From: Iphione sp. A-MEVVRFRX5
Lineage: Eukaryota
DNA length: 64,000 nt
Reading direction: 5' to 3'
Assembly: GCA_976226885.1 (NCBI GenBank)
Contig: OZ320317.1
Coordinates: forward strand, 34,100,001 to 34,164,000
Part shown: positions 10,001 to 29,700 of the stretch, piece after piece
How positions within the stretch are numbered: the first letter of the stretch is position 1
Layout of the letters: every line of letters begins with the position of its first letter
Translations under genes and position numbers: made by a program
Notes under the pieces: model-generated
The model's database searches: none
The model's input: the letters and a program-made list of their open reading frames with translations, nothing else
Told to the model about the DNA's origin: nothing

Positions 10001-10963
10001 AAACGGACGTATAAGGGAAAGGAATGTAACACGCATACAGACTGATACAGTGACCTCCCTACGCAAAAAATATAGAGCTAAAGTAGGAAGGGAGACAAAG
10101 TGAGAGAGAGAAAAGGAGGGAGGGAGATTGATAAACAGAGAGACAGACCTGGAAATAACTACTCAGAGAGATATTGGGACCGGTCTACCTAATCAAGGCT
10201 ATAACACATCTTCCCCACAGCAAGCTAAGGGCCCCCTCATTCAGTAAGACGCCTACTTCCAAGTGCGTCGTTACCAAAGTAATAAATTGCAGGCAGGAGC
10301 CGCATACCAGCCTACCCAGGCCACTGATGACTACTAGAACATGGGTAATAAGGTAATTGCACTGTTGTTGTGTTGACAGATGGTATCCTCAAACATATGG
10401 GGATAGGGGCCGGTCTTAAAGGGAGCCACATCTTTACGAAGAGTACAAACGTATTGCCTTTTGCTATTACAACCTGTGTTGTCTTGACTTCCACTGTTAC
10501 AAACTTCAATATCGATTGGTTTGGAAACAGTTTTTTTGTGTCACCCACAACTCTCAAGAGCATTAGTATCATCTGTTTTCCTAGTTCACTCCCTCCGGTC
10601 GAAGGCGTGGTTCACGGTGCTTATCTTTCAATAATTGCATTTCAGATCTTTGTATATCAGCGTAGAAATCTTTTATATGCTTAATTTAGACAGCTCATAC
10701 TTTGCATCTATTCTAAAACTTACTCACATACTAGTTGGCTATATTGACTTTCCCTTCCTCATCAAGTGTCTCTCATGCTTTCTTTTGGGTACTTCAGTTT
10801 TTTCCTCGTCATTTCCAGTCTTGCTGTGTATATACATCGTTCTGTCCATCGTAGTTCGCTTATCTTTGTTTCTGTTTCTTTTTCCTCATTTCTCCCTCGT
10901 CGCTTTATTCTGGTGCTTTTCCTGCCCTTTTCCCTCCTGTTCGTTCCATGCCTATTATTCTCT

Positions 10964-10971
<8 letters not shown>

Positions 10972-11007
<36 letters not shown>
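10972..11007. repeat. (CT)n microsatellite in a pyrimidine-rich tract
   Basis: Direct reading. Confidence 0.97.
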
Positions 11008-11010
<3 letters not shown>

Positions 11011-11774
11011 TATCTTCGCTACCTTCCCTTGCCTCTTTGACTACTTATCATCTTTCTCTCCCTATTCCCTAGGCCCTCAACCTCCCATGTATCTAGCCAT
11101 TCATTTTTGTCGATCTGTATTCCTCTCTTAGTCTGCCGTGTGCTCTCTCGACGACTTTCACCTAGAAGTCAAAACTTTTTTCTCTCCCTAGCAGTTCCCG
11201 TACCTTTTCCGCAAGTAGCATATTGCTATGCTGCAAGCAGCATTGCAATTTCTTATAGTAGCAACTGTGGCACCAGTAACTTTACATTATATAGCTTCAC
11301 CTCTCTGCCATCACCCATTTCGATACATCAGGAATGACAGGACGTCTAATTCAAACATGTTTCTAGCTGGTCCGGTTAATGTGTTGACATTATCTTTTCA
11401 TACAAGACTTATTTCGGTTCTCAGATTTTCAACAAGTAACATATTATCTCTAGGCGGGGATGTTTTTACCATTTGCAGACTAAATACATGTGCATGCAAA
11501 TAATGCCCCCCCCCCCCAAGGCAAAAGAACGTGTAAGTTGATGGAGCACAAATGAAGGTAATTTCAGGTTACTGGAAGGTACTTTTTAGACCCGACGAAT
11601 CCTCAATAATGACACTGTAAATGTCGCCGCCCCACAAGAGCATCCAGCGAACAGCATTAAGGCGTGTGTATGGGGGCGGCAGGCGCTGGATTGTGCATCA
11701 CCGGGGGCGACTTGTGCAGAATGAATCACTGCCCTTGTGGAAATGCTTCACTGCAAGGGGTTAATATCATGTGG

Positions 11775-15200: not shown

Positions 15201-17112
15201 TTGACCAGAGGAGTTCATGAAGTCTGCATCCCGGATATATAACAGCTGAGTTGAAGCAGTTCTGTTGTCATTCAACGATATGCACACCAGTAAGGCTGAC
15301 CTAGGTTCGATGGACAAGGTTCGCAGTGTATTGCAGGTGCCGTGGCGGTAGTAGCCCGAAACGCCCCGGGGAAACAGCTGAAGATGCTGGAAAACACTTA
15401 AAAGATTGTTACCCAAAAGTGGCTTCGAGGGAGAATTCAGACTCGGATCCCGAAGAACACATGCTAGTCACAAGTTAGGCTGTGGGCATTGCATGAGAGT
15501 GACCTAAATGGCACAATTGGCAAGAAGACACATGTCGACTGGGCCATTCTGTCCTTTAAACGTTCTGATCTGTCCCCCATGGATAGCTGGTTTGCCTATT
15601 TTATCCTGGAGGTTACCGACAACGATGGGGTGCTATATCCACCCTGTAAATGGAAAATAGCTAAAGTAATAAACCATACATGGAAATGTCAAATAAACTT
15701 ATTTGTGTTCTTAACATTATCGATTGCTTTCTCAGAGGTCCCCTCACGAATATCCAAAAACGATTACAATGCTACATAAGAGATGTGCCTGGACAACAGA
15801 AGCAGATGGACATACACTTAAGAACTGCCGACAATACTCTGGATGCGAGTGGCTGATAGCAGAAACGTTGTGCATAAATATCCACCATGCCGACATCATC
15901 ACAAATGTGGAAGAGAAGCAACTGTTCGATAGTAACTTGCCAGCAAATGGACTTGAGAAAATCTTATGGCATGTACTCTCATGACTGCCAGCGTTTTAAG
16001 GGCAAAAGATGAACATTTGAATCTAGATGCACACCATGAATTGAGAGCCAAGTTGATGCTTTATGTGTGTTGCTGTAATTTTACAGAAAAAGGACTGCGA
16101 CTGAGTAGATGTACATGTACTACGCATCGGTTGAACCGAATTGTAATCCGTTGAGAAAATATTCTGTCGTTAAATATTTTCGGAGGGCTTTGAGGCGTTG
16201 AAACATGTTTTTCATTAGTGTATTCAGAGCCTGAGTCACACCCCTGGAGGAGGGTTCTCATCTTCTCCGTCCAGGGACCACACCAATGATGCTCACGTGT
16301 TCGATTTTAACAGAGAAGAGACCAACGCCAGTGAGGCTAGCGTTTGCACTTACCAAACCCTCTCAAAAGTTCTGTATTCAGGTAATGAGGCTTGGTCATC
16401 AAGTTTCTATTCTTATCGTATGCCGACTGCACAATTTCCAAAAGCGTTCCAGAGAAGCGAGGTCTGACGTTAATATTTCCGGCCAGAAATAAAACAAAAA
16501 GACTATACTAAAATTTTACATTTCAATTTATCTGAAGTATAAAAGTGTTTAGGTCGAGGAAAGGATTATTCAGAGAGAATGATTAGCGGTATTTTGTTCT
16601 CGTAGTTGATCATCAAGAGAGCCTGGACATGTTTAATCTGGTCTAATATTCCCCCTATCCGACTCTCTCGCCTAGTGCCGCTCCAACAGCCTCCCATGAA
16701 AGAGAGCTAACGACCCACCCTCCCGCCCTCCTACCAAACAACCCAACACCCAGCCCCGGGGGCATTCAACCCTGGATAGGTTCACTGACCCGTGACGGTA
16801 CAGTCGTTTTGCACTGTTAGCACCAAGCCCCCTCCCAGTTTCGGCGTTCTCTTGCCATTTTTCCAGTGCCGTACATCAAAATAAGTTGATGTGGGCTTCG
16901 CATGGTATTGTCACATTGAGTTGCCCTGCGCCCTGGATGGCTAGCTCCTAGGGTGAGTAAGTAGACTAAGAAGGCAACGTGATGGGGCTCGATTCAAACA
17001 GATCCAAATAATGTACACCGACGGACCTACTTGGACTTACAAACGAACTCACATGCAGCAGCGGCCATAGAAATTTAAATGAGGTTGATCGGCAGTATTT
17101 CTTTTCCCTTTG

Positions 17113-17136
17113 CTCTCTCTCTCTCCCTCCCTCCCT

Positions 17137-17201
<65 letters not shown>

Positions 17202-17206
17202 TCTCT
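17113..17206. repeat. Compound microsatellite (CT)n(CCCT)n(CT)n(CA)n
   Basis: Direct reading. Confidence 0.98.
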
Positions 17207-17839
17207 AGTAACGTAGGGAAGGAGAGCAGAAACAAATTCTCCCTTCCCGCTTTTTCCACACATTTAAACAAACACGGCCAGTAGTTCTGCAACATAGACA
17301 TATATATTACAAAGAATATGCAAGCTTTAGCACTGGAAGGAATATACCTTTCGTTAGAGTGCCAGTCAACATGCTGCAACACAGTCGTTTGCCCTTTGTG
17401 ACGTCATAATAGAGATACCACCTATCAGAATTTCGATGAAAAGTACGTAAAAATTGCGTCGTAATGCTTTCAACTACTTCGGCAATGGATCAATTGTTTG
17501 TAGTCCCTTTATTATTCCACGCATTATGATTGTGACACTGTATTTCTAATAAATGATAATGACAATGGAAATCATATATGTATATATACTTGTACCTTCG
17601 GCCCCTATTCTTTCTTTATACCTAATGAACCGAACCACAAATCATACACAGTACCTACAACTAGTTCAAACATCACGGACTTCGCCCATGGCGAAAATCG
17701 GTACATCTTTTCAGCTCTCACACACCAACGTACATACATACCTTACCCCATCCAGGTCCCTCCTCCTAGCCCTCACTTCCTCCCCCACTGCCTCCGTCCA
17801 TCCCTCTACACCCTTTACAAATGGCATGCTGCTTATGGG

Positions 17840-18065
17840 CCCAGTTGAAAGCAATAGGTGGTTAATTTGTCCACACCGGTGCCGAGTTAAGGGGGTGATG
17901 GCTGCTCTAATGCAGGTGAGAGAGTGCAGAGGGAGTCTGTCCATTATGCATGAGTGTATGCACAAATGTTCGCGCACAACTTTGTGCTTGCCCCAGGGAT
18001 CAGTCCTACGTCCCTTATATCGTAGCATAGAAGCCACTGCTGTGATGTTGATATACTGACGGTAA
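17840..18065 (+). pseudogene. Decayed non-LTR reverse transcriptase fragment
   Basis: Translation VKGVMAALMQ...RTTLCLPQGSVLRPLY...MLIY, followed by a frameshifted TGAC, resembles the RT G(L/V)PQGSVLGPL and YADD motifs at about the expected spacing. Confidence 0.55.
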
Positions 18066-18362
18066 AGGTCACTTCAGCATAAATCTCAAAATAGTAAGCA
18101 TAGGGGTCCCCACTTTGAAAGAAAAAAACTTGGCATAGATAATGGCTAATAAAGTAACAAAGAAATACTTTCCCCGAAGCGCAATATGAATGAGTTCTTT
18201 ACACCATGGTGAGTTATTTAGCTTATGATTAGCATGGTCACAATCAGGCTTCCCTTGATAGATATGGGGAGGTGTATGGGTAATGTGAATATGAGGTTAA
18301 TTACCATATGGAATCAATACAGAGGTATTTGAGTTTCGGAAGGGTATTCGGTCGAAGTTAGA

Positions 18363-18393
18363 TTTTTTTTTTTTTTTTTTTTAATCTTTTATT
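18363..18393 (-). terminator. Polyadenylation signal and poly(A) tail of the LINE
   Basis: Sense strand reads ...GTA AATAAA AGATT followed by A20. AATAAA is at 18388-18393, about 500 nt after the ORF2 stop. Confidence 0.8.
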
Positions 18394-18896
18394 TACACTG
18401 GGGTTCAAATACAAATTGTATATATTCCAGTATATTCCTACAGAACAATCTTCAACAAAGTGATGTATGAGATGAAATGATCAAGGAGGGGGGAGGGGGG
18501 GTTTGTGTTAGGACTGATACCCATTAATGTTATTGCTGATGACAATGTGATAATGTGATTCTGATGGTTATGCTGGTGATGCTGGTTATGGATTCTCATT
18601 GAGATAGGATGGGATATGCCCAATGAGGAGAATCTATTGTGCAATGATTGAGCATTATAGTCGATTCACAAAGTCTCTTCCAGTGCCCCAAAAGGCACAC
18701 ACGCGTTCAGTACCCCACACGGGTATTTGATATATTTTTCCTTTCCCGTTTGGTATGATATGAAGTTACATCTGCGTTCGTTTCCCCCCTACCTTTTATC
18801 TTGGTTCTGATACATATTCCTTTGTTCAAGCATGATGCTAGGTGAGACGGGGGTAGCGGCAGTGCCCCTTACCCCTTTGTTCGATTTCTAGTGTCA

Positions 18897-21698
18897 TCAT
18901 GGTATTCTAAATAGGGCTTTGTATTTCCTAGCTTGCTGTCTCATTTGGCTCCTGAACTCTTTCAATCCGAGTAGAGTGGTTTTTGCTGGCAGTTTGTCCC
19001 ACAACCTACTACATATGTAGGTTGGGGATTTCCTGTAGCTTTCATACTTTGGCCTTTGAACAGGCACATGTTTTCTCCCCTCTGCCCTTGTTACTCTCTC
19101 TTGTTCTCTCTCTCGCGCACACGGATACCCCATTATTAGCAGTCTAGTATCCCTTCCGTTCAAGTAATCTTTTTTCGAATCCTCTAAATCCACTCTCCGG
19201 TAACCAAATGCTGTATTTAAAATGTTTTTTCGTAGCCTACAGATTTTTTCCACTGGCTTAGAGGAATCCCTGACCGTAATTATAGCATATTCACTTAAGG
19301 GTAGAATCATCGTGCGGGCTACCATAATAGCTTCTTTTTGTCTCATGAACGGTCTTATCTTTCTGAAATACCTCAATTTTCCCGCTAGCCTCCTAACTAG
19401 CTGCCATTGGTGACTACTCATGGTAAGATTGCTATCTATTGTTACCCCTAAATACACCACACTTCTAACCACCTTAACTTCTGTCGACTTTGTCTTGACC
19501 ATGTCTCCTAGGGGAGTTTCACCTCCCCTGCGGTAACTAAACTGAGTGCAGTATGTTTTAGACATATTTATTTGTATTTTTGACCCTGTGGACCACTCCG
19601 CCAGCTCATCCAGGGCTTTCCCCACTTCATGCCTCAGCTCTGCCGGCGTTCTCCCCTCCACTATTAATGCAACATCATCCGCATACAGTATACTCCATGC
19701 GGTGCTTAGTGCTGCTGGTAGTCCATTGATAAAGATTAGGAAGAATAGGGGTCCTAAAATGGACCCCTGAGGGACTCCGCATGTCACTGTTCTAGGGTTC
19801 GACGTCGTCCCGTTACATATTACCCGTTGTTGCCGGCACTTCAGGTAGTCTCTAATCCATATCATTTTGCGCTCTGACAGACCCAGCGAGCCTATCCTGC
19901 TCATGAGGACAGAGTGGTCCACAGAGTCAAAAGCCTTTCTAAAATCTACGAATATCCCCGCTACAAGCCTTCCCATGTTTAGTTTTTCATGTACATAGTG
20001 CAATAGTGTAAATATTGCCTGTTCCGTCGATCTTCCTGGCCTGAAACCGAATTGTTGCTCGCTCAACAGCTTATGTTCGTCCAGGAATTTAAGTAATTCT
20101 TTGTGTACCAGTTTTTCTTGGGCTTTAGCAAGAATACTTAAGAGACTTATGGGCCGATAATTTGAGACCTCATCTCTCTTGCCTCCTTTATATAGGGGGA
20201 CAACAAATGCATCTTTCCAATCGCACGGGACTATCCCGTCTTCAAAACTCTTGTTACATAGGCGGGTAAAAAAGTCTTCGTTTTGCTCTACAATCCTTTT
20301 AACCAACCTTGTTGGTAGTTGGCCCACCCTAGATGCCTTATGATTCTTGAAGGAATTAACTTGCTTGGTGAATTCACCTGGTTCTGCAACAAAAGGCCCT
20401 CCCTCCCTTTTACCCATATACAATCTAATATTTTGGGTGCCTTCCGCTTCACCTAATTCCTCATTTATCCTCCTCCCTACATTAATGAAAAAGCTATTTA
20501 TCTCATCGGCAACTCGGTGTTTGGTGATCGTATCCTTATCTTGTCTAAGCTTAATACTTACACTCGGTGGTTTACCCCATCCGAAGCTATGCTTCAGGTG
20601 TCCCCAATATTTAGTGCTTTCCCCTTCATATTCCTTCGCTTTATTGATAACATAATTTTTCTTTGCTAGTCTCACTGCAGTTGCGACTTGTTTCTTCTTT
20701 ATCTTAAAGACCAGCCAGTCATCCGTCCCCCCACTTATCTTGGCTAACTTGTATAAATTGTTCCTCTCCCGTATGAGTCGTAAAACTGCTTCACTTAACC
20801 ACGGGGCTGGGCGAGTTGATAGTTTTTTACATTTCAGTGGATTCATACAGTCATAAAGCTTCGTTAAATAGTTTCTAACTAGTTCCCATTCAAGATTAGG
20901 TCCCATTTTTCCACCCATTATGTCTTTGATGCGGCTGTTTACTCTGTCTATGTAAGTCTCTTCATCGAACTTTTTTGTCTCTCGCACCCATCTACATTGT
21001 CTTATTTCTACCCGGTTCAATGGCAGTCTACTTATTACCGCATCATGATCTGTAAAAGCCAATGGTAATATTTTTGTTGTGACCCGTATTCTCATATTGG
21101 TCATAACTATGTCTAAAATTGTCTGTGAGCGGTCGGTGGTCCTGGTGGGATCCGTTACCAACTGAGCCCCCCCACTCTCATATAAGAAGTCTCTCATCTT
21201 GGTGTACGTCGTATGTGTTTTCTTTCCAAAATCCACATTGAAGTCGCCTGTAATTAAATAGTTCCTAAAATTCACCCCACCCTGGGTGCTTAAATGTCTA
21301 TTGATGGATCTTAAAGCAACATCTAGGTTTCCTGTCGGGGGTCTGTAGCACCCCACTAGATAAAATTGGCATTCGTCTGTTGCTATTCTCATCCATATTG
21401 ACTCAAAATCCTCACTACTGTCTCCCATGTCAGTCAACACCTCCACATGGTCTAAGTACTCTACCTTAATATAAGCGACCATCCCACCTCCCCTTATCTT
21501 TTTGCGTCCTATCCTATCCTTTCTAAACATGGTATAGTGTTCTATGTTCAGTAACTGGTCTGGCATATCTGCGCTTAGCCATGTTTCCCCCAAAATAATA
21601 ATGTCCCATTTGTAAGTAGTTATCGACAACACAAGGTCTTCCAGGTTTTTGTAAAGGCTCCGAACGTTGATATAACAGATATCTAACATTTTAGTCAT
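18897..21698 (-). CDS. LINE ORF2: apurinic-type endonuclease + reverse transcriptase (933 aa from the first ATG; the ORF track starts at GTG 21707)
   Basis: APE motifs INVRSL, LGETWL, KDR..GGG, GDFNVD, LDIV, TDH. RT motifs YRPISLL, QFGFRPGRST, DFRKAFDSVDH, GVPQGSILGP, YADD, YLGV. CR1/L2-type C-terminus (SRLWDKLP). Confidence 0.97.
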   Translation of the reverse strand: MTKMLDICYINVRSLYKNLEDLVLSITTYKWDIIILGETWLSADMPDQLLNIEHYTMFRKDRIGRKKIRGGGMVAYIKVEYLDHVEVLTDMGDSSEDFESIWMRIATDECQFYLVGCYRPPTGNLDVALRSINRHLSTQGGVNFRNYLITGDFNVDFGKKTHTTYTKMRDFLYESGGAQLVTDPTRTTDRSQTILDIVMTNMRIRVTTKILPLAFTDHDAVISRLPLNRVEIRQCRWVRETKKFDEETYIDRVNSRIKDIMGGKMGPNLEWELVRNYLTKLYDCMNPLKCKKLSTRPAPWLSEAVLRLIRERNNLYKLAKISGGTDDWLVFKIKKKQVATAVRLAKKNYVINKAKEYEGESTKYWGHLKHSFGWGKPPSVSIKLRQDKDTITKHRVADEINSFFINVGRRINEELGEAEGTQNIRLYMGKREGGPFVAEPGEFTKQVNSFKNHKASRVGQLPTRLVKRIVEQNEDFFTRLCNKSFEDGIVPCDWKDAFVVPLYKGGKRDEVSNYRPISLLSILAKAQEKLVHKELLKFLDEHKLLSEQQFGFRPGRSTEQAIFTLLHYVHEKLNMGRLVAGIFVDFRKAFDSVDHSVLMSRIGSLGLSERKMIWIRDYLKCRQQRVICNGTTSNPRTVTCGVPQGSILGPLFFLIFINGLPAALSTAWSILYADDVALIVEGRTPAELRHEVGKALDELAEWSTGSKIQINMSKTYCTQFSYRRGGETPLGDMVKTKSTEVKVVRSVVYLGVTIDSNLTMSSHQWQLVRRLAGKLRYFRKIRPFMRQKEAIMVARTMILPLSEYAIITVRDSSKPVEKICRLRKNILNTAFGYRRVDLEDSKKDYLNGRDTRLLIMGYPCAREREQERVTRAEGRKHVPVQRPKYESYRKSPTYICSRLWDKLPAKTTLLGLKEFRSQMRQQARKYKALFRIP

Positions 21699-22024
21699 TT
21701 GTTTCACCCATATTATAACCCTTTAACAAGTAGACGATGTGACCACTTAGCTGCTCATTACGGTGAAGGAGAGGTAGATGTTGCCCTTGGCAATGCAATA
21801 GTGAAGCGTCTATATGGAGTGATGATGGCTGATGAGTTGCATCCCCGTCTTGGGAGACGCACATGATCGATGTGAGTTGTGTTTCTACCACTGAATAGTG
21901 GCAAAACGGCCCCGGCTACCCGTGCGAATCATCAAAATGAAAATGAAAAGATTTCAATCTTGAGGTATATGAACAACATGAGGTATCAACACAGTTCAAT
22001 TGCAAGTCATTCTTTTATGTCGCG

Positions 22025-22728
22025 GTATGTGGTGCTGAGCTCCTACATACAATGTATCTGATTTGAGAAATACTTCCACTAACACCATATTCTGATTGTT
22101 CTCAGAGTAACTAGCTTAAGTTGGTATCCTGCAGTTGTTCTTTGAGGTACAGTCAGTTCGAGACAAAAGAATAAACATGTCTCAGTTTGTGCGGTGCTCT
22201 GCCCCTGCACAGTTTTACAGAGACGTTGTTAATCATAATATAGAGGACGACCTCGTCATGCGGTGCTGTGCTCCTGCATGTACTATTCAACTGGTGCACT
22301 TTAACTGATGTATTTTATAACCAAGCCCAATGTACATGTAATTTGTCATGCGGTGCTTAGCTCCTACATGACCTGTCTTCTTTTCCAATTATTCGTTATG
22401 CACACATTGCATATGATACTAGATTATCGCTTAATTGACCGGCGTCGTCGGACAGCTTGGACAGGCATTTTCTACTTACAGAATTTGCCGTTACATTCTT
22501 CGATATTTAGTACATAATTTCATACTTTACCAAGAGTAGATTTACACCCATTACTCGCCACTACCGCTCACATTGGTTTGCGTGATGTGTATGGTGCTGT
22601 GCTCCTATGCACACCTGCAAGTAGAACTCATGAACAAGCAATATTTAGTAATATCGTGGAGCAGTATTCTTGCTGAACAGTTTGCCCGTTTTGACTCTGC
22701 ACTATACACGGTGCTGGGCACCTGTGTA
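22025..22728 (-). repeat. Array of six dispersed copies of a structured RNA hairpin; sense consensus [stem]-A-GG-N-GC-NNA-GC-A-CC-[stem']
   Basis: Copies at 22705-22728, 22586-22613, 22345-22372, 22257-22280, 22188-22211 and 22025-22050. The core is invariant, while the 5-7 bp lower stems differ in sequence but stay complementary. Confidence 0.9.
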
Positions 22729-22743
22729 ACACGAGTGAACCAT

Positions 22744-23472
22744 TTATGGACAATTGCTAGTTACGTAGTCCTTAATAATTCTGGCGACTTTTCCTTTATA
22801 AGTTTGACTCAGATGACAGCCATCCATGAGTCGATTATATCTATGGCGATAATGACTATTTTCCCTGGTGTGTATGAGACTACTGATGTTTAGTTGAGGC
22901 ATGCCATTGATGGCATTAATGCACCTAACTGTGCCATTAAAATAGAGAACAGCCTCATTAATAACATGTTGAATGTAGCGCTCGCTAGTCTCATTAACCA
23001 CTAGGCCACATCGGTTCTTATTATATACCCTATAGCTTAGCCCGAAAATAGTGGAAAAGGTATACTTAATGCCCATAGGTTTCAGCAAATCATCCAGTAT
23101 TTCAGTCTGAGAACGTAGCAACGAGCTAATACTCTCAATACTTTCATTTACTGTATCATACCTGTTTCTTACATATCTGCCCGCCTGCGAGCCCGCCGCA
23201 ACAGAAACATCGTTCAGACAAGTGATATTATTGATACCAGCTAGGATGATAACATATGCAAAAGCGTATTTGTCACATAACGTTATGGCATGATGTACAA
23301 TGTCCTCTAGCTTCTTACCTGAATTCACAGACACTGCTACTCTGTAGCAATTTAGCGAACCTAGGTGACGCAATAAACCCCTACCGTGACTGTCAGTTAT
23401 CAAAAGTGTCCATTTGTGGTGGTGATCAGTACCATAGTACTCCAGGTTATCCCTTGTTCGTACATAGTTCAT
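22744..23472 (-). CDS. SGNH/GDSL-type hydrolase (esterase) ORF, 242 aa, overlapping the ORF1 end by 26 nt
   Basis: All four SGNH blocks are in order: LLITDSHG (block I Ser), VNSGKKL (block II Gly), ILAGINN (block III Asn), DGCHLS (block V Asp/His). ATG start at 23472. Confidence 0.85.
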   Translation of the reverse strand: MNYVRTRDNLEYYGTDHHHKWTLLITDSHGRGLLRHLGSLNCYRVAVSVNSGKKLEDIVHHAITLCDKYAFAYVIILAGINNITCLNDVSVAAGSQAGRYVRNRYDTVNESIESISSLLRSQTEILDDLLKPMGIKYTFSTIFGLSYRVYNKNRCGLVVNETSERYIQHVINEAVLYFNGTVRCINAINGMPQLNISSLIHTRENSHYRHRYNRLMDGCHLSQTYKGKVARIIKDYVTSNCP

Positions 23473-25036
23473 CGCGAACTTGTGTTAGTAGACGCCCGTA
23501 GTTGTTCAAACCTCGGCCTCTCGACTGACTCGTAGGTGATGTCGGTGCGACTCCGGAACCCCAGTAGCCGTCCTTCGTTGTGATCACAATTTCTCTGTTG
23601 CCGGTGGCTAGAAGATCATTTTTGGCCTTCGCGTCTTGTATAAATTTCTCTCGTAGAATCGTTCGCATCACTTTCAGCCTTGAGTTAGTCCAGTCTGAAG
23701 TCGACTGTATGCGGCAGCCCAGCCTTTCAATCTTTGCTCTCGAACGTAAGGGCAAGATCTCCTTTGCTAATTTATCCTGCCGACACAACTGTAGTCCTTC
23801 CCAATAGTACGCATGTGCGGCAGAGAGGAAAACTTTCCCCTTCCACCTCAGGTCTGCCTCGTTGTCAGATGATAGCCTTGTACCCGCGTGGTCGATAAAA
23901 ATATATTTTCGTCTGCACGAAGTGACCCCTTCGTCACCAGACCCGTCCTCCCCAGACCCACTCTGTTCCACTTCCATTGGTGTTATTTTCGCTGCTGCCT
24001 CTATGGGTGCCTTCTCAGCCTGTGCGGCGACCGGGGTGGCTGGTAACCCGCTCCTCCTCGATCGTGTTTCACGCCTCGGTTGCTCCTCTAGGGTTACCGG
24101 TTTGGGCTCCTGTTTCTTCCTCTTCTTACTTTCGGCCTGGCCTGCTCGTTCTGATTCGGATGTCTCCGTTTTACTTGCTTCTCCCTCACTGGATTCCCTC
24201 TTCTTCGCTAGCTGCTCTGCTTTTTTCGACATGGCCAGTTTCCGTTGTTCCAGAGTAAAGTCATGATTCAGCCAGATGTCCTTTCCTTTTAGATTTTTCT
24301 TCCTAGCCATTACGTCTGACTTTTTAGAATATGATCTGAAACGTACGAATATTCCCCGTATACCACTCTTATTAGCACGTTTCGTTCTATACGCAGTGTC
24401 AAGGTCGTTCACAGTTATTTTTGTTCCAATTGAGCTAAATAGCCTAATAACAGCGGCAAGCGTGTTCTCATTATCGGTTTCCTGCATACCCTCAATGAAA
24501 ATATTATTTCTCTTCTGGAGTCGCTCTAGTCTCTCACATCGTTTCTCCAGTTCCACATGTATTTTGCCACGCTCTTTAGATACTACTTTGTCAGTGTCAG
24601 TCAGTGCAATTTGTTCCTCCAACACTTCCAGTCTAGTCTCCATCGCCTTGACATCATTTTGTACCTCCCATATATCGGCGGTATTCGATTCTACCATTTT
24701 CGTAATTTTTGCGACACTGTCCTCACATATCTTAAGTACCTGATCCATTTTCTTCTGTAATTTCTTATCGCGTTTTGAGTCAGCCAGCTCCTTTTTATGC
24801 ATTTGTTTTAGGAAATCATTCCAGCTCGGGAACCCTGCAGGATCGGGTTCAACGTCGTTCTCGTCATCAGAATCGTCCGTCTTCCCTCCCTCCGTTCTTT
24901 TCTTGTTTTCCCTCTCTAGAGGACTAACCTCCTTCCTCTTTGTACCCTTTACAGTTGTGTAGGTCGTTTCCTCATCATCTGAGCTTTCCTCTAGATTACC
25001 TTGTGTCGGTGTTGAGCTCTCAGCTATTTCCGCCAT
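23447..25036 (-). CDS. LINE ORF1 protein (529 aa): acidic N-terminus, coiled coil, L1-ORF1-type RRM/CTD, low-complexity linker, C-terminal NADAR (YbiA-like) domain at about aa 377-525
   Basis: Heptad-rich segment (VQNDVKAMETRLEVLEEQI...LEKRCERLERLQKRNN). RRM-like NNIFIEGMQE...DLDTAYR...IFVRF...LKGKDIWLNHDFT. NADAR signatures: VMRTILREKFIQ, LLATGNREIV, DGYWGSG, GLNNYGRLLTQVRDEL. Confidence 0.88.
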   Translation of the reverse strand: MAEIAESSTPTQGNLEESSDDEETTYTTVKGTKRKEVSPLERENKKRTEGGKTDDSDDENDVEPDPAGFPSWNDFLKQMHKKELADSKRDKKLQKKMDQVLKICEDSVAKITKMVESNTADIWEVQNDVKAMETRLEVLEEQIALTDTDKVVSKERGKIHVELEKRCERLERLQKRNNIFIEGMQETDNENTLAAVIRLFSSIGTKITVNDLDTAYRTKRANKSGIRGIFVRFRSYSKKSDVMARKKNLKGKDIWLNHDFTLEQRKLAMSKKAEQLAKKRESSEGEASKTETSESERAGQAESKKRKKQEPKPVTLEEQPRRETRSRRSGLPATPVAAQAEKAPIEAAAKITPMEVEQSGSGEDGSGDEGVTSCRRKYIFIDHAGTRLSSDNEADLRWKGKVFLSAAHAYYWEGLQLCRQDKLAKEILPLRSRAKIERLGCRIQSTSDWTNSRLKVMRTILREKFIQDAKAKNDLLATGNREIVITTKDGYWGSGVAPTSPTSQSRGRGLNNYGRLLTQVRDELCTNKG

Positions 25037-25439
25037 ATTTCAATGCAACGTACTCTATGATTATTAATTCTTCACACCTTCCGACCTTCAGAGAGTGTAT
25101 ATAATCACAACCCCATACATAGCATAATACAAGAGCAAAATATATGTATGTTTGCTTAACTCACGGGTTGATTATCGTCTGTTGGGCCACTTTCCGTTGG
25201 TCGCGGTTGCGTCCGGTGTTCTCCTCCGAGTTTGTTATTATCCTCGTTTTTCGCCCACTGCAGTTGTCGCATATTCTAATCACACTATTGCTCACAAATA
25301 CATGGCCTCTTTCAATATTGATCCGCTCAGCTTTCTCAGCAATATAATCACTCAATTAGCTTGACCAAAAACATTGCCCTCGAACATTGTCAGTCTAAGC
25401 CTGTTACCTCCGTTTAGGTAGAAAATCGGGACCGTGCGC

Positions 25440-25479
25440 CAAACACGTCCTACTCGCGCTCGGCCATTCTATATTCGTG
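25440..25479 (-). promoter_or_regulatory. Probable 5' end / internal promoter start of the LINE, with a YY1-like ATGGCCG motif
   Basis: Sense AGAATGGCCGAGCGCGAGTAGGACGTG in a CpG-richer patch about 430 nt upstream of the ORF1 ATG. It resembles the AAGATGGCCG start of L1 5' UTRs but is an imperfect match. Confidence 0.4.
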
Positions 25480-26548
25480 AGATTTATGAGAGCTTTGTTG
25501 TATACGTATCACATACAGCATATAGGCTGTAATTGAAGCCCCTTGCTTCTTCCCGTCGCGGCCCTTATTAAAAGGTCCCTAGTAGAAACCTTGACAAAGA
25601 GAAAATATAATCGATTCTTTTTGAAAGTATTTCTATGAGAGACATTTCACTAAGTGGCTTTCTACAACAGTAAATACCAATGAATACGTGCACATTGACT
25701 ATATAACAAATGATTTGGAGAAGAGTTTATAGTCTTTACTCTATCCCCCTTTAACAGTGAGCATCCAGAATGGCTACCGCTAGGAAATATGAGGGCAATT
25801 GTCGTGTGTACATGTATTTATTATATATTGAATCTGTCTATATATAAATTCATAGTTAATTCAACCATTATTTGGATAGTTGCTACGTGGATGGTTTCCC
25901 GGATAAAATGTTGCTGTAGAAAAGGGATACGTTGCTATAGTACATTTTGTGATATGAAATATGATTGCATACTATTTAGGTGTATAAATTAGACTGCGAT
26001 GAATATGATCACTCAACAATAAGGGAAATCTTGAGGACATGGTATTTTCTCTTAAATCCTGTGATATACAGTATATAAGAAAAATATCTTTGCTAAAAAT
26101 ACCATGATTGAATATCAAAAAAATGACACAGTACAACATAGACAGGCATTCACTGCTGCTTATATACCAATACTGTAAAAATTGTTTTCAGTTCTAACCT
26201 GTTAGTGTGTTGATACCAAATACAAATTTATGTTAAATCATTAACACTTTTAATACACTGATGTTAATCATAGCAGTTGCACACAGCTATACTCTAAGTT
26301 ATCAAAAGTATTTACCTTTCACTAAAAACACCATTAAAGCATTTCAAAAGTGTTACAAGCCGAAACAAGTTACTCAATTTTATTCTATTAACATGAATAG
26401 TGTTCAGATTATTAATACATTAACATCTTTAAAATACATCTGACAAAGCATGTTCAAAACTGAACAATTGTCTTTTAAGTGCAGGTGTAACCATTGCAGC
26501 ACCTAGAATAGCAGATATATCTTACATGTCCCTCATCAGTGGCTCCTA

Positions 26549-26737
26549 GCAATGGCACAGGCACATCCAACCAGTTGGGATGATGCATCAACCACCTCCT
26601 GTAAAATCCTGGCAATGATGCAGGCACACCCAACTAGTGGACACGACTCATCGATCACCTCTTGGGAAGTCTGGGCAATAATACAAGGACACCTAACTAG
26701 TGGGGATTACCCTTCAAGCACCTCCCTGAAAATCTTT
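26549..26737. repeat. Three diverged tandem copies of a 63-bp unit
   Basis: Units start at 26549, 26612 and 26675 (GCAAT...CAC..AAC.AGT.G...CACCTC). Exact 63-nt period with no indels. Confidence 0.85.
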
Positions 26738-29700
26738 CCATAAGGCAAGATGGCCGGAAAATATACGTTGACTATTTCGAGAAGGATGTTTTCGATGAAA
26801 ACACTTAATTGTCATACTTTATACTTTTTATTCTGTAAAGTACAGCATTGTCCTAAGGAGACTGCTTTCGCAAAGGACTGGTTGAGAAGAGTATGACTCA
26901 ATACAAATTAATTATGTTCATGGAAACTTTGAGATGATATTGACGGTGTTTTAATTCATTTTAAGAACTATTTTCATCTCACTGTAATTAAGTACACGTA
27001 ATGGTATGCTAACATCTATTGACAATATGGTACAGTGATGTGCACCACAATGGTACATGTCGTATAGTATCCTGGGGAATGTCAACTGGTAAATATATCT
27101 GCCGGTAGGTTTACAGTGAAATGCCCAGTAGATGCTGTTTAAATAACGCCATCACTTCAGATATGTGAAAGTACTTGGCAGTCGTGAATTAAATATTTGA
27201 AGACAGATTTCAATTTCATTACTTTTATGAAATTGATAACATAATGCCAGACACTTCAGGAATTGCAGTGTCACTGTTGTAAATAACACTGATGATTTGC
27301 AAGAATGTCTTCTGTTGGGGTCAAGAATGTCCTGATTAAATGAGACTATTCCGAATGTTGGAGTTCAGCAAAAAATGACAGACCATAACTCAGATGAGGA
27401 GGATTTCACCGGGGAGGATGACGTTCTTCTCCTTCTAAAAGATGGAGAAGGAGATTTTGAAACAAGAAGGGAAATAAATCGTAATATCAGGAGTATGATT
27501 GTCAGGTGGAGAGGAATCCTTTCAAGAAAATGGAAACAAAATTTTTTGTTGTGTACATGAAATGGGCTTATGTTGAAGAAGACATGACATAAGCAATGAA
27601 TCAATTGGACTCAGCGTATGGTACATTACTGTGATAGAATAACTTGGAGTGGAAGGAAACATATTTATCATAAATGAATGCCCACCGGAAGGGCATGACA
27701 ACCAGCAATACTTCTTGTTGCTTGTCTTTCCATAAAACGTCTTGGATTTGGGGGCGTCAACAGCCCTGCAAGCTGAGGGTTCGCGATCTCCAAATAAAAT
27801 GTAAATCTAAACATATTGTAAGTATGGGTTGGTCCAAATAAACTCAGGTGACCAATTTCAAACCAATTTATTCTCCAAGGACCCTGTGTATTTACAGGTG
27901 CACAGCATTCAATAGGAATTACTACATAGAAACAAATGTGTATCTACATTTAGTATGTATTCCATCTAATCAGTCCTGAGCCCAGAAGGCAGCTAATCAA
28001 GATTCACTAGTTCCTCCCCAGTGATATGTAAAAATATTAAATGACATGAGCCAAACATACCAGAATATTTAAATTTCTACAAATAAGACATGGCCTGACA
28101 ATATATTCAATGACCCCAACCTACCCCCAATGACCCTGGCACTAAGTGGACCTTCACGAGTATTGGATCAAATCTAATCCTTCTCTAATCCAGCACCAGT
28201 TCCTGCGTTCTGCCAGTAGCATCATTACCAATGGTAACATTTGTATCTAACTTTTACAGACATCTGTACATAGTATGTAGCACATGGAACTGACTGGATC
28301 TTGGAAAAACAAGACCCGTAGATATGGCTTTATCCCCAGTTTTGGCCCTGAGCAGAAGTGCTTCAAATCACAATACTTGCACCGCTACATTAATTGTTTC
28401 CTAAAAAACAATATAAAAGGCTTGGCGAACTTCTACACGATGCGTCGTTTTATGGGTATCGCCACTTTCACGTTAAAAAATAGATGGTTTCAAGGTATTG
28501 GGCAATCTATGATACAGCGTTTAAAAATCTACTGTAGAATGCAAGGTTCCATACATATAACACCTTCCACAGGTAGATTTGTTTAAATCTAGACATCCGG
28601 TGTGAAAGTTTATTTAGGAGTATGCTTACTTGGTAAAAGTCATGACTTGCACTGGTCTACTATTCTAGAGGCATAAGGTCATAGAGCCATGGGCCTAGAA
28701 ATCTTGATCTTGATCAGAGAAAGATATCAAATCCCAAATCCAAAGTGATCTGCATTTTTTCCAAAATGGCTTTGGATATATCGTATTCTGCCCCATATAT
28801 ATATATATATATATTTAAAAAACAGAAACAGCTATTATGCTCTTTCAATTCTCAAATATAAAGAAAGAATGAAATGAAATGTCATCAGTGAATACTGCGA
28901 TCTATAGTACTAACGTTAAAAGTCACAAATGGTATATACCCCCAATAATCAGGACCCGTCTGTCTTTTGGTCCTATTAGTTCCGGAATAAATTACTTATC
29001 CATCTATTTACCTATATGTTTGACTTGAGCAATTCACATTCAGTACCACTTGACACTGACTTGATTATAGGCGATGATGGATTTATGAGATTTATGAGAT
29101 TGGACTGCAAATGATATAGATTTATATACATTTATATATATATATATATATCAATCGTTTCGTGTGTATTCTCAGAAATGTCTATCTAACCAAGTCGACG
29201 GTAAAGCATTGCAGCTTGTAAATACATGCAGCAGTAATGTTTATTGGTTGCTATGTTGCGAGGTACTTCCTGTTTGGGAAGCTTTCGTTTCGGTCATTCT
29301 ACGGGGACCATTCAGCGTATGATAATGAAGGCTGGTAGGCAGAGATGTCGAACTCGTTTTCCACTGCGAGTCTCATAAGGCACATTGAGTGTTTCCACAG
29401 ACAGTGTGACAAGAGCTCATGGCTGCAACCCAATATTTTATAAGGCTATGGATTTCAACGCCTCAGCCATACTTACATATTTTCGAGTATCTCTAATGAA
29501 ATACAGTATATACGGAAATCGATGACCAAGAAAACCAACTGCAAGCTTATTCAACGTTTCCCTAATGAAATTTCTTCTAATTTCCTTGTTGCTCTTAGTC
29601 TAACGACGTTTATCGAGGCAGAATATTAGGACTTGGCTGGTACTATTTCCCTTTCCTACTTGATGCATCCAAGTGCTCTATAAGGTGACAGAGTTAGTTA

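What the first reader, a model, noticed from the sequence alone, without database searches (positions are those of the whole stretch)
22025..22728. Six-copy RNA hairpin array with covarying stems in the inter-ORF spacer of a LINE
Seen directly, in sense 5'->3' order: UACAC-A-GG-U-GC-CCA-GC-A-CC-GUGUA (22728-22705); UGUGCAU-A-GG-A-GC-ACA-GC-A-CC-AUACACA (22613-22586); GUCAUGU-A-GG-A-GC-UAA-GC-A-CC-GCAUGAC (22372-22345); CAUGC-A-GG-A-GC-ACA-GC-A-CC-GCAUG (22280-22257); UGUGC-A-GG-G-GC-AGA-GC-A-CC-GCACA (22211-22188); GUAUGU-A-GG-A-GC-UCA-GC-A-CC-ACAUAC (22050-22025). The bulged A, GG/CC, GC/GC, the third loop A and the 3' internal A are invariant in 6/6. The lower stems change sequence but keep pairing, with one C-A mismatch. 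One copy pairs by a U-G wobble that works only on the sense (minus) strand, which favours an RNA rather than DNA structure. The sequences between copies are unrelated and of uneven length, so this is not a simple tandem repeat. The first copy begins 16 nt after the SGNH stop codon. Inference: a multivalent protein-binding site, superficially like the bulged-A MS2 operator, used for RNP assembly/packaging by the element's own proteins or for controlling ORF2 translation. I know of no description of such an array in LINEs, but I could not search the literature.
Basis: partly seen in the sequence, partly recalled or inferred. Interest (0 to 1): 0.92.

Follow-up and report, generated by a model that had tools for sequence, protein, structure and literature searches.

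The report
Repeated RNA hairpins inside a LINE
A jumping gene (LINE) carries six copies of a small, precisely conserved RNA hairpin between two of its genes, and distant relatives carry similar arrays with different motifs, which points to undescribed family-specific protein docking sites on the element's RNA.

Summary
The core AGGNGCNNAGCACC occurs six times in 64 kb, all on the minus strand at 22031-22723 (0.02 expected by chance). Each copy folds as described. In the 5-bp lower stems, 29 of 30 cells pair and all five pairs show changes on both sides. A covariance model scores the six copies at 35-40 bits and nothing else above 16.

The wobble argument for strand is cancelled by a C.A mismatch that would be G.U on the other strand. 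The element is poly(A)-tailed with an L1-type ORF1p RRM, so it is L1/Tx1-like, not CR1/L2.

New evidence comes from distant relatives of this three-ORF lineage (NADAR-ORF1, SGNH ORF, EN-RT). The exact core is absent from them. Three of five families with readable spacer DNA carry their own repeated hairpin after the SGNH ORF. One of these families also has copies in its 3' UTR. Two families in one assembly use different motifs.

Best reading (about 0.5): family-specific, multivalent RNA binding sites for an element-encoded protein. No same-family copies could be fetched and function is untested. The scan noted similar hairpin arrays on other DNA of this genome; those notes are unchecked.

The parts
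22705..22728 (-). hp1: UACAC-A-GG-U-GC-CCA-GC-A-CC-GUGUA. The N.A position is a U-A pair here.
   Evidence: 34.8 bits
22586..22613 (-). hp2: 7-position lower stem with one C.A mismatch. It can extend by G-C and G.U to 22584-22615.
   Evidence: 37.5 bits
22345..22372 (-). hp3: 7-bp lower stem with a U-G wobble next to the bulged A.
   Evidence: 37.5 bits
22257..22280 (-). hp4: CAUGC/GCAUG lower stem.
   Evidence: 38.6 bits
22188..22211 (-). hp5: UGUGC/GCACA lower stem, with a G.A internal loop.
   Evidence: 35.4 bits
22025..22050 (-). hp6: GUAUGU/ACAUAC lower stem.
   Evidence: 39.9 bits
21699..22743 (-). 1045-nt spacer between the SGNH stop and the probable ORF2 AUG (21698). It holds 26 AUGs followed by short ORFs. 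The array fills the first two thirds, and the last roughly 320 nt have no hairpin copy.
22744..23472 (-). Stand-alone SGNH/GDSL-like ORF (242 aa). Its start overlaps the end of ORF1 by 26 nt.
   Evidence: conserved DSRG and DGxH blocks; weak GDSL lipase matches. No Pfam hit.
23447..25036 (-). ORF1 (529 aa): coiled coil, L1-ORF1p-type RRM, disordered linker, NADAR domain.
18897..21698 (-). ORF2 with APE-type endonuclease and reverse transcriptase.
18363..18393 (-). AATAAA signal (18388-18393) and A20 tail (18363-18382) that end the element.

Best explanation
The six hairpins are selected structural elements of the LINE's sense-strand RNA. Each presents the same unpaired and apical nucleotides (5' bulged A, GG/CC, N.A, GC/GC, NNA loop) on a helix whose sequence is free to vary as long as it pairs. 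Together they form a multivalent, family-specific docking platform for a protein.

The most likely ligand is encoded by the element itself. The first candidate is ORF1p, which has a coiled coil and an L1-type RRM. ORF2p is the alternative. Binding would nucleate or specify assembly of the element's own RNP. Because the array lies between the SGNH stop and the ORF2 start, binding may also gate ORF2 expression.

Shown here: the motif, the pairing, the covariation, the analogous arrays in relatives, and the RRM fold. Inferred: that a protein binds, which protein it is, and what binding achieves.
For: - Six exact cores against 0.02 expected, all in one 700-nt stretch of one strand.
- 29 of 30 lower-stem cells pair and all five pairs change on both sides. 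Tests: arm-swap permutation 2/720; excess of double over single changes, P about 5e-6.
- 11 invariant core nucleotides sit in flanks that have lost all similarity.
- The covariance model (CM) scores the six at 35-40 bits and nothing else in the window above 15.7. Phage contigs chosen only for containing the core reach 17-24 bits, so the core alone does not bring paired flanks.
- Relatives of the same three-ORF lineage were found through the SGNH ORF.
- All relatives with a mapped or sequenced ORF2 keep a 0.4-0.8 kb gap between the SGNH ORF and ORF2.
- Three of five families with spacer DNA carry their own repeated hairpin:
  - L003: 3 copies of A-UG-AACAG-CA with a bulged A.
  - L007: 2 copies of A-UCCCA-GUCU-UGGGG.
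  - L126/L127: AAGGAUAUUACCUG, 3 copies in the spacer and 2 in the 3' UTR, 5 against 0.16 expected.
- In the relatives' hairpins the sense strand is more stable in 9 of 10 cases and carries most of the G.U pairs.
- L007 and L126 come from one assembly at about 40x coverage but use different motifs. This fits private, element-encoded ligands better than a shared host factor.
- The ORF1p central domain models as an RRM, and the best matches are human L1 ORF1p structures 2ykp, 2ldy and 2w7a.
Against: - No copy of the same family could be fetched, so covariation is measured only among the six paralogous hairpins of one element.
- The exact core is absent from all relatives.
- L006 and L004 show no clear array.
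- For the window's six hairpins the antisense strand folds equally well.
- Predicted pairing in the full spacer is unstable for hp2, hp3 and hp5.
- L1 ORF1p is known as a sequence-non-specific binder (my knowledge of the family).
- There are no expression, probing or binding data.
- The window element has no copy in its 3' UTR.
Confidence: 0.5

Rival explanations
1. The hairpins recruit a host factor or the ribosome, as an IRES or ITAF platform or a reinitiation enhancer, so that ORF2 can be translated from the polycistronic RNA across a 1-kb spacer full of AUGs.
For: - The 1045-nt spacer has 26 AUGs with short ORFs, so scanning to the ORF2 AUG is implausible.
- The array lies between the SGNH stop and ORF2, and a long spacer is kept across the lineage.
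- IRES activity upstream of ORF2, with the host factors hnRNPL and nucleolin, is reported for mouse L1 (PMC3592465, abstract seen).
Against: - In the L126/L127 family two of the five copies lie in the 3' UTR, downstream of ORF2.
- Families in the same host assembly use different motifs, which is unexpected for a shared host ligand.
- The last roughly 320 nt before the ORF2 AUG have no copy.
Confidence: 0.2
2. The hairpins are signals read by host RNA transport, stability or defence machinery. They could act as localisation zip-codes like the I-factor and gurken signals, or as decoys or shields against silencing.
For: - Repeated small stem-loops with a fixed apex are typical of localisation and stability elements.
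- A LINE localisation hairpin is known for the Drosophila I factor (my recollection, not checked here).
- The copies in the 3' UTR of L126 fit such roles.
Against: - The motifs differ between co-resident families.
- No match to any Rfam family.
- Nothing here tests localisation.
Confidence: 0.1
3. The structure acts in DNA. It could be cruciforms or palindromic factor sites in the integrated copy (an internal promoter or insulator), or hairpins in the first-strand cDNA during target-primed reverse transcription.
For: - For the six window hairpins the antisense strand folds as well as the sense strand, and the wobble evidence is 1:1.
- The core contains CAGCACC, which resembles the left half of the vertebrate REST/RE1 site (my recollection).
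Against: - A factor site would conserve sequence rather than covary in its flanks.
- The asymmetric bulge and N.A mismatch are invariant.
- In relatives the sense strand is favoured 9 of 10 times, with G.U pairs mostly on the sense strand.
- The RE1 right half and its spacing are absent.
Confidence: 0.08
4. The array has no function. It is a set of old duplications of a palindromic unit, with stems kept complementary by a mutational process such as hairpin-templated switching during replication or reverse transcription.
For: - All stem changes are transitions on one alternating pyrimidine-purine scaffold, which is compatible with descent from a single ancestral hairpin.
- Covariation is seen within one element only.
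Against: - Template switching would also erase the bulged A and the A.A mismatch, yet these are invariant in all six copies.
- The flanks have decayed to no similarity while 11 core positions stay identical.
- Independent families evolved analogous arrays.
Confidence: 0.07

Closest known systems
MS2/PP7-type coat-protein operator hairpins, and the dispersed packaging-signal stem-loops of ssRNA viruses (MS2, STNV)
   Same: A single 5' bulged A below a short apical stem-loop. Recognition nucleotides are fixed while the stems vary. Several dispersed copies lie in one RNA. Different lineages have different motifs, as do MS2, PP7 and Qbeta.
   Different: The geometry differs: here there are 2 bp, a 1x1 loop and 2 bp between the bulge and a 3-nt loop, against 2 bp and a 4-nt loop in MS2. 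There is no coat protein. The host is a eukaryotic LINE. Binding is untested.
Iron-responsive element array in the transferrin-receptor 3' UTR
   Same: About five copies of a hairpin with an invariant bulge and loop on covarying stems, separated by unrelated sequence in one mRNA, acting as a multivalent protein site.
   Different: An IRE has a C bulge and a CAGUGN hexaloop. It is read by a host protein (IRP) and controls mRNA stability. There is no sequence relation.
3' UTR stem-loops of 'stringent' LINEs (eel UnaL2, zebrafish ZfL2) recognised by their own reverse transcriptase
   Same: A family-specific RNA hairpin in a LINE transcript, read by an element-encoded protein. The L126/L127 relatives also have copies in the 3' UTR.
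   Different: Those are single hairpins at the extreme 3' end of L2-clade elements that lack poly(A) tails. Here there are six copies in an inter-ORF spacer of a poly(A)-tailed, L1-like element, and none in its 3' UTR.
Mouse L1 inter-ORF IRES region
   Same: A cis-acting RNA region upstream of ORF2 in an L1-type element (PMC3592465).
   Different: No repeated hairpin motif is described there. That activity is attributed to host factors on an A-rich sequence.

Membership tests
Any curated RNA family (Rfam 15) | Match to a covariance model at or near the gathering score | tested here: not met
   No match at E<=1 in window 17000-27000 on either strand.
MS2-type operator hairpin | Bulged A two base pairs below a 4-nt loop with fixed A positions, bound by a phage coat-protein dimer | tested here: not met
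   A bulged A is present, but it is followed by 2 bp, a 1x1 loop, 2 bp and a 3-nt NNA loop. No coat-protein gene is present in the element.
Iron-responsive element | C bulge five base pairs below a CAGUGN loop | tested here: not met
   The bulge is A and the loop is NNA.
Stringent-type LINE 3' recognition stem-loop | A hairpin at the 3' end of the element, next to the tail, shared with partner SINEs | tested here: not met
   The CM finds no copy in 18363-18900 (best 5.6 bits). The array lies 3.1-3.8 kb upstream of the tail. Partner SINEs were not searched.
L1/Tx1-like LINE (the host element) | Poly(A) tail; ORF1p with a coiled coil and an L1-type RRM; ORF2 with APE endonuclease and RT | tested here: met
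   AATAAA and A20. RRM model with human L1 ORF1p as best structural match, E about 1e-4 and 23-29% identity. RVT_1 and Exo_endo_phos_2 domains. No RT phylogeny was made, so the clade is not fixed.
   The tail is A20 after AATAAA. The SGNH domain is a separate ORF.
Dispersed viral-type packaging signals | Several stem-loops that share a minimal motif and bind the particle-forming protein co-operatively | not testable with these tools
   The sequence features fit. Binding and assembly need experiments.
REST/RE1 DNA site | A 21-bp bipartite site: CAGCACC, 2 bp, GGACAG | tested here: not met
   Only the left half-site occurs, in 4 of 6 copies. No right half follows it at the canonical spacing. The consensus was recalled from memory.

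The most novel reading that the evidence does not exclude
Each family of this NADAR/SGNH LINE lineage carries a private operator-protein pair. A family-specific hairpin, repeated in the SGNH-ORF2 spacer and sometimes in the 3' UTR, is read sequence-specifically by that family's own ORF1p (or ORF2p). This would give L1-type elements a sequence-coded self-recognition system that keeps co-resident families from mobilising each other's RNA. It would also supply a natural set of orthogonal RNA-tag and binder pairs.
Probability: 0.3. Interest if true: 0.85.

Novelty: new variant of a known kind. Interest (0 to 1): 0.66.

Why it matters
L1-type LINEs are thought to find their own RNA mainly by cis-preference and poly(A), and ORF1p is thought to bind RNA without sequence specificity. 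A repeated, covarying hairpin that differs between families would argue that some LINE lineages use sequence-specific RNA recognition, as RNA viruses do with packaging signals. It would also make two questions directly testable in a compact system:
- how a third, distal ORF is expressed from a LINE RNA;
- how co-resident families avoid cross-mobilisation.

No description of such arrays turned up in the literature searches run here.

Tried and rejected
- Rfam scan of the element: no match.
- Word-based protein searches with the SGNH ORF and ORF1: nothing.
- ORF2 search: best hit only 30% identical, so no same-family copy is in the public collection.
- L001 and L002, the nearest ORF2 relatives: no motif.
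With the single protein it found no relative in metagenomes.
- Exact 24-nt hairpin pattern in metagenomes: 0 hits.
- Two-core pattern in viral contigs: only chance singletons, used as a negative control.
- Three relatives in ERZ26222911 gave gene maps but no DNA.
- L005 ends at the SGNH stop.
- L004 and L006 spacers: no convincing array.
- Pfam does not detect the RRM or the SGNH fold.
- REST/RE1 half-site idea: rejected on order and spacing.
- MEC-8/RBPMS 'GCAC' idea, prompted by a low-ranked RRM fold match: not pursued, because the relatives' motifs lack GCAC.
- The 3' UTR hairpin at 18850-18875 looks like hp5 but scores below the CM listing.
- Splicing of the spacer was considered because of a GTAAGT at 22474-22479. 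One such hexamer in 1 kb is near chance, so it was not followed.

Full report
**1.

Reading the minus strand of 21900-22900 shows the six hairpins exactly as listed.

- The 14-nt core AGGNGCNNAGCACC occurs six times in the 64-kb window. All copies are on the minus strand between 22031 and 22723, against 0.02 expected from shuffles. Allowing one mismatch adds no further site.
- Folded alone, every copy gives the same shape: a lower stem of 5-7 bp, a bulged A on the 5' side, GG/CC, a 1x1 internal loop N.A (closed as U-A in hp1), GC/GC and an NNA triloop. Energies are -8.4 to -12.3 kcal/mol.
- No other repeat family links the copies, so the intervening sequence is unrelated.
- hp1 starts at the 16th nucleotide after the TAA that ends the upstream ORF.

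**2. The pairing is more than chance or shared ancestry**

- On an ungapped alignment of the six copies, 11 core positions are invariant.
- The five lower-stem pairs nearest the bulge form a standard pair in 29 of 30 cells. Each of the five pairs has changes on both sides. Pairing collapses to 18-53% when the 3' partner is slid by 1-3 columns.
- Cognate 5' and 3' arms pair better than arms swapped between copies; only 2 of 720 permutations reach the observed total.
- Relative to the commonest pair, 9 cells changed on both sides and 2 on one side. If the 20 changed sites fell at random, 9 or more doubles would occur with P about 5e-6.
- The doubly changed copies are shared in incompatible patterns (hp2+hp6, hp1+hp2, hp2+hp5, hp3+hp4), so several independent events are needed.
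- All changes are transitions on one alternating pyrimidine-purine scaffold. This fits descent from one ancestral hairpin that evolved through wobble or mismatch intermediates.
- A covariance model built from the six scores them at 34.8-39.9 bits. The next best hits in the window are the antisense of three of the hairpins, at 15.7 bits or less, and then noise.
- As a control, phage contigs picked only because they contain two copies of the core sequence score 17-24 bits. The core alone therefore does not bring paired flanks.

**3.

- *Strand.* The U-G wobble in hp3 works only on the sense strand, but the C.A mismatch in hp2 would be a G.U wobble on the other strand. The evidence within the 5-bp stems is therefore 1:1.
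- The summed folding energies of the six are about equal on the two strands.
- The sense-RNA reading therefore rests on context (ORFs and the poly(A) tail on the minus strand) and on the relatives described below.
- *Context folding.* Within the whole 1045-nt spacer, predicted pairing probabilities are high for hp1 and hp6, intermediate for hp4, and unstable for hp2, hp3 and hp5, depending on the allowed span. The similar copies can pair with one another. Thermodynamic prediction neither proves nor disproves the array.
- *Classification.* The element ends in AATAAA plus A20. The central domain of its ORF1p, modelled from a six-sequence alignment (pLDDT 78), has the beta-alpha-beta-beta-alpha-beta order of an RRM. 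Its best structural matches are human LINE-1 ORF1p (2ykp, 2ldy, 2w7a; E about 1e-4; 23-29% identity).
- With a preceding coiled coil and the NADAR domain, this is an L1/Tx1-like element, not CR1/L2.
- A paper notes NADAR domains in ORF1 proteins of Tx1 LINEs of the Pacific oyster (PMC12477816).

**4. Anatomy of the element (minus strand)**

| Feature | Coordinates | Evidence |
|---|---|---|
| ORF1 | 25036-23447 | |
| SGNH-like ORF, overlapping ORF1 by 26 nt | 23472-22744 | |
| Spacer | 22743-21699 | |
| ORF2 (EN-RT), probable AUG at 21698 | 21698-18897 | |
| 3' UTR and tail | to 18363 | |

- The SGNH assignment has no Pfam hit. An exhaustive search gave about 70 homologues of 205-240 aa at 25-32% identity. 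Their alignment keeps a DSRG block and a DGxH block, and the profile weakly matches GDSL lipases in the PDB.
- The spacer holds 26 AUGs followed by short ORFs, so ORF2 cannot be reached by simple scanning.

**5. Relatives**

No same-family copy exists in the public collections searched. The best ORF2 hit is 30% identical, and the metagenome scans were blank. The SGNH homologues did lead to distant members of the same three-ORF lineage, with a NADAR ORF1 directly followed by the SGNH ORF. Wherever ORF2 was on the contig, a gap of 0.4-0.8 kb separates the SGNH ORF from ORF2.

The window's core is absent from all of them. Three of five families with spacer DNA nevertheless carry their own repeated hairpin:

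| Locus | Motif | Copies and positions | Notes |
|---|---|---|---|
| L003 (only 228 nt of spacer available) | AUGAACAGCA | 3 (0.36 expected) | Variable lower stem, bulged A, UG/CA, AACAG loop |
| L007 | AUCCCAGUCUUGGGG | 2: one just after the SGNH stop, one 500 nt further on | Unpaired A below the upper stem, different lower stems |
| L126 and L127 (97-98% identical paralogues) | AAGGAUAUUACCUG | 3 in the spacer (first copy 20 nt after the stop) and 2 in the 3' UTR; 5 against 0.16 expected | Each is AGG/CCU with a hexaloop on a different lower stem |
| L004, L006 | none | no convincing array | |
| L002 (NADAR LINE without an SGNH ORF, 190-nt spacer) | none | none | |

- In these ten hairpins from relatives the sense strand is the more stable in nine, and it holds 10 of the 13 G.U pairs. 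This supports a sense-strand RNA structure for this class of element.
- L007 and L126/L127 come from one assembly with uniform coverage of about 40x, yet they use different motifs.
- The L126/L127 family also ends in AATAAA plus an A-rich tail.

**6. Interpretation**

Invariant unpaired and apical nucleotides on freely covarying stems, repeated several times in one transcript, are what protein-recognition hairpins look like. IRE arrays, phage operators and viral packaging signals are examples.

- The motif changes from family to family, even within what appears to be one host genome. The organisation persists: several copies, the first one close to the SGNH stop, and an unpaired A below the apical stem.
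- This pattern is easier to explain by ligands that co-evolve with each family, meaning element-encoded proteins, than by one host factor.
- The element encodes a plausible ligand in ORF1p (coiled coil plus L1-type RRM). The multivalency of an oligomer would match a multi-copy site.
- Copies in the 3' UTR of one family argue against a role limited to ORF2 initiation.
- The position of the array, and a spacer that scanning ribosomes could hardly cross, keep a translational role alive.

I put about 0.5 on element-protein docking for RNP assembly or self-recognition, possibly coupled to ORF2 expression. The other readings get about 0.2 for a host-factor/IRES platform, 0.1 for localisation, stability or defence signals, 0.08 for a DNA or cDNA-level structure, and 0.07 for no function.

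**7. Limits**

- All covariation for the exact motif comes from paralogous hairpins within one element.
- The comparison with relatives shows analogy of organisation, not homology of sequence. A shared ACAGCA(C) between the window and L003 may be coincidence.
- The three relative families with repeated hairpins have only 2-5 copies each.
- No transcript, probing or binding data exist.
- Two other first-reader notes in this genome report hairpin arrays in a LINE inter-ORF spacer and in a LINE 3' UTR. They agree with the picture, but they are unchecked and I could not read their DNA.

**8. Novelty**

No Rfam family matches. Six full-text searches found no description of repeated hairpins in LINE spacers. 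That library is incomplete, so absence there is not proof. I class this as a new variant of a known kind: multi-copy protein-recognition hairpins, here in an L1-like LINE.

Noticed in passing
window 18850-18875 (-): A hairpin 22 nt after the ORF2 stop (GGGGUA / UACCCC stem). Its apical part, AGGGGCACUGC, resembles hp5 (AGGGGCAGAGC), but it lacks the 3' A-CC and scores below the CM listing. This is of interest because a related family has true motif copies in its 3' UTR.
   Followed up: partly
   Followed up: yes
window 24167-24541 (-), ORF1 residues 166-290: Pfam detects nothing here, but the AlphaFold model is an RRM whose best structural matches are human LINE-1 ORF1p. In the window's ORF1 the CTD-like segment seen in relatives is replaced by a K/E/S-rich linker before the NADAR domain.
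   Followed up: yes
window 22188-22728 (-), lower stems of the hairpins: All lower stems are strictly alternating pyrimidine-purine (5' YRYRY), and every difference between copies is a transition. Either helix shape matters or the copies descend from a single ancestral hairpin.
   Followed up: partly
window 23447-23472 and 22741-22746 (-): The SGNH ORF start overlaps the ORF1 end by 26 nt. The SGNH stop is followed at once by AUG (UAAAUG), which opens a 13-codon ORF. Both hint at coupled translation of the upstream ORFs.
   Followed up: no
window 22474-22479 (-): A perfect GTAAGT 5' splice-site-like hexamer lies inside the spacer. One occurrence in 1 kb is near chance, and no matching acceptor was sought.
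   Followed up: no
L126:10893-10906 and 11003-11016; L127:10256-10269 and 10360-10373: In this related family the spacer hairpin motif recurs twice in the 3' UTR, each copy on a different lower stem. One copy carries a U-to-C change in the loop.
   Followed up: partly
L126:11180-11460: A GC-rich repeat of about 280 bp (GTCGCCGGGCGAC units) is inserted in the 3' UTR of L126 but is absent from its paralogue L127.
   Followed up: no
L002:5188-9844: A LINE in the same assembly has a NADAR ORF1 but no SGNH ORF. Only 190 nt separate ORF1 and ORF2, and there is no repeated hairpin. The long spacer and the arrays therefore go with the SGNH ORF.
   Followed up: partly
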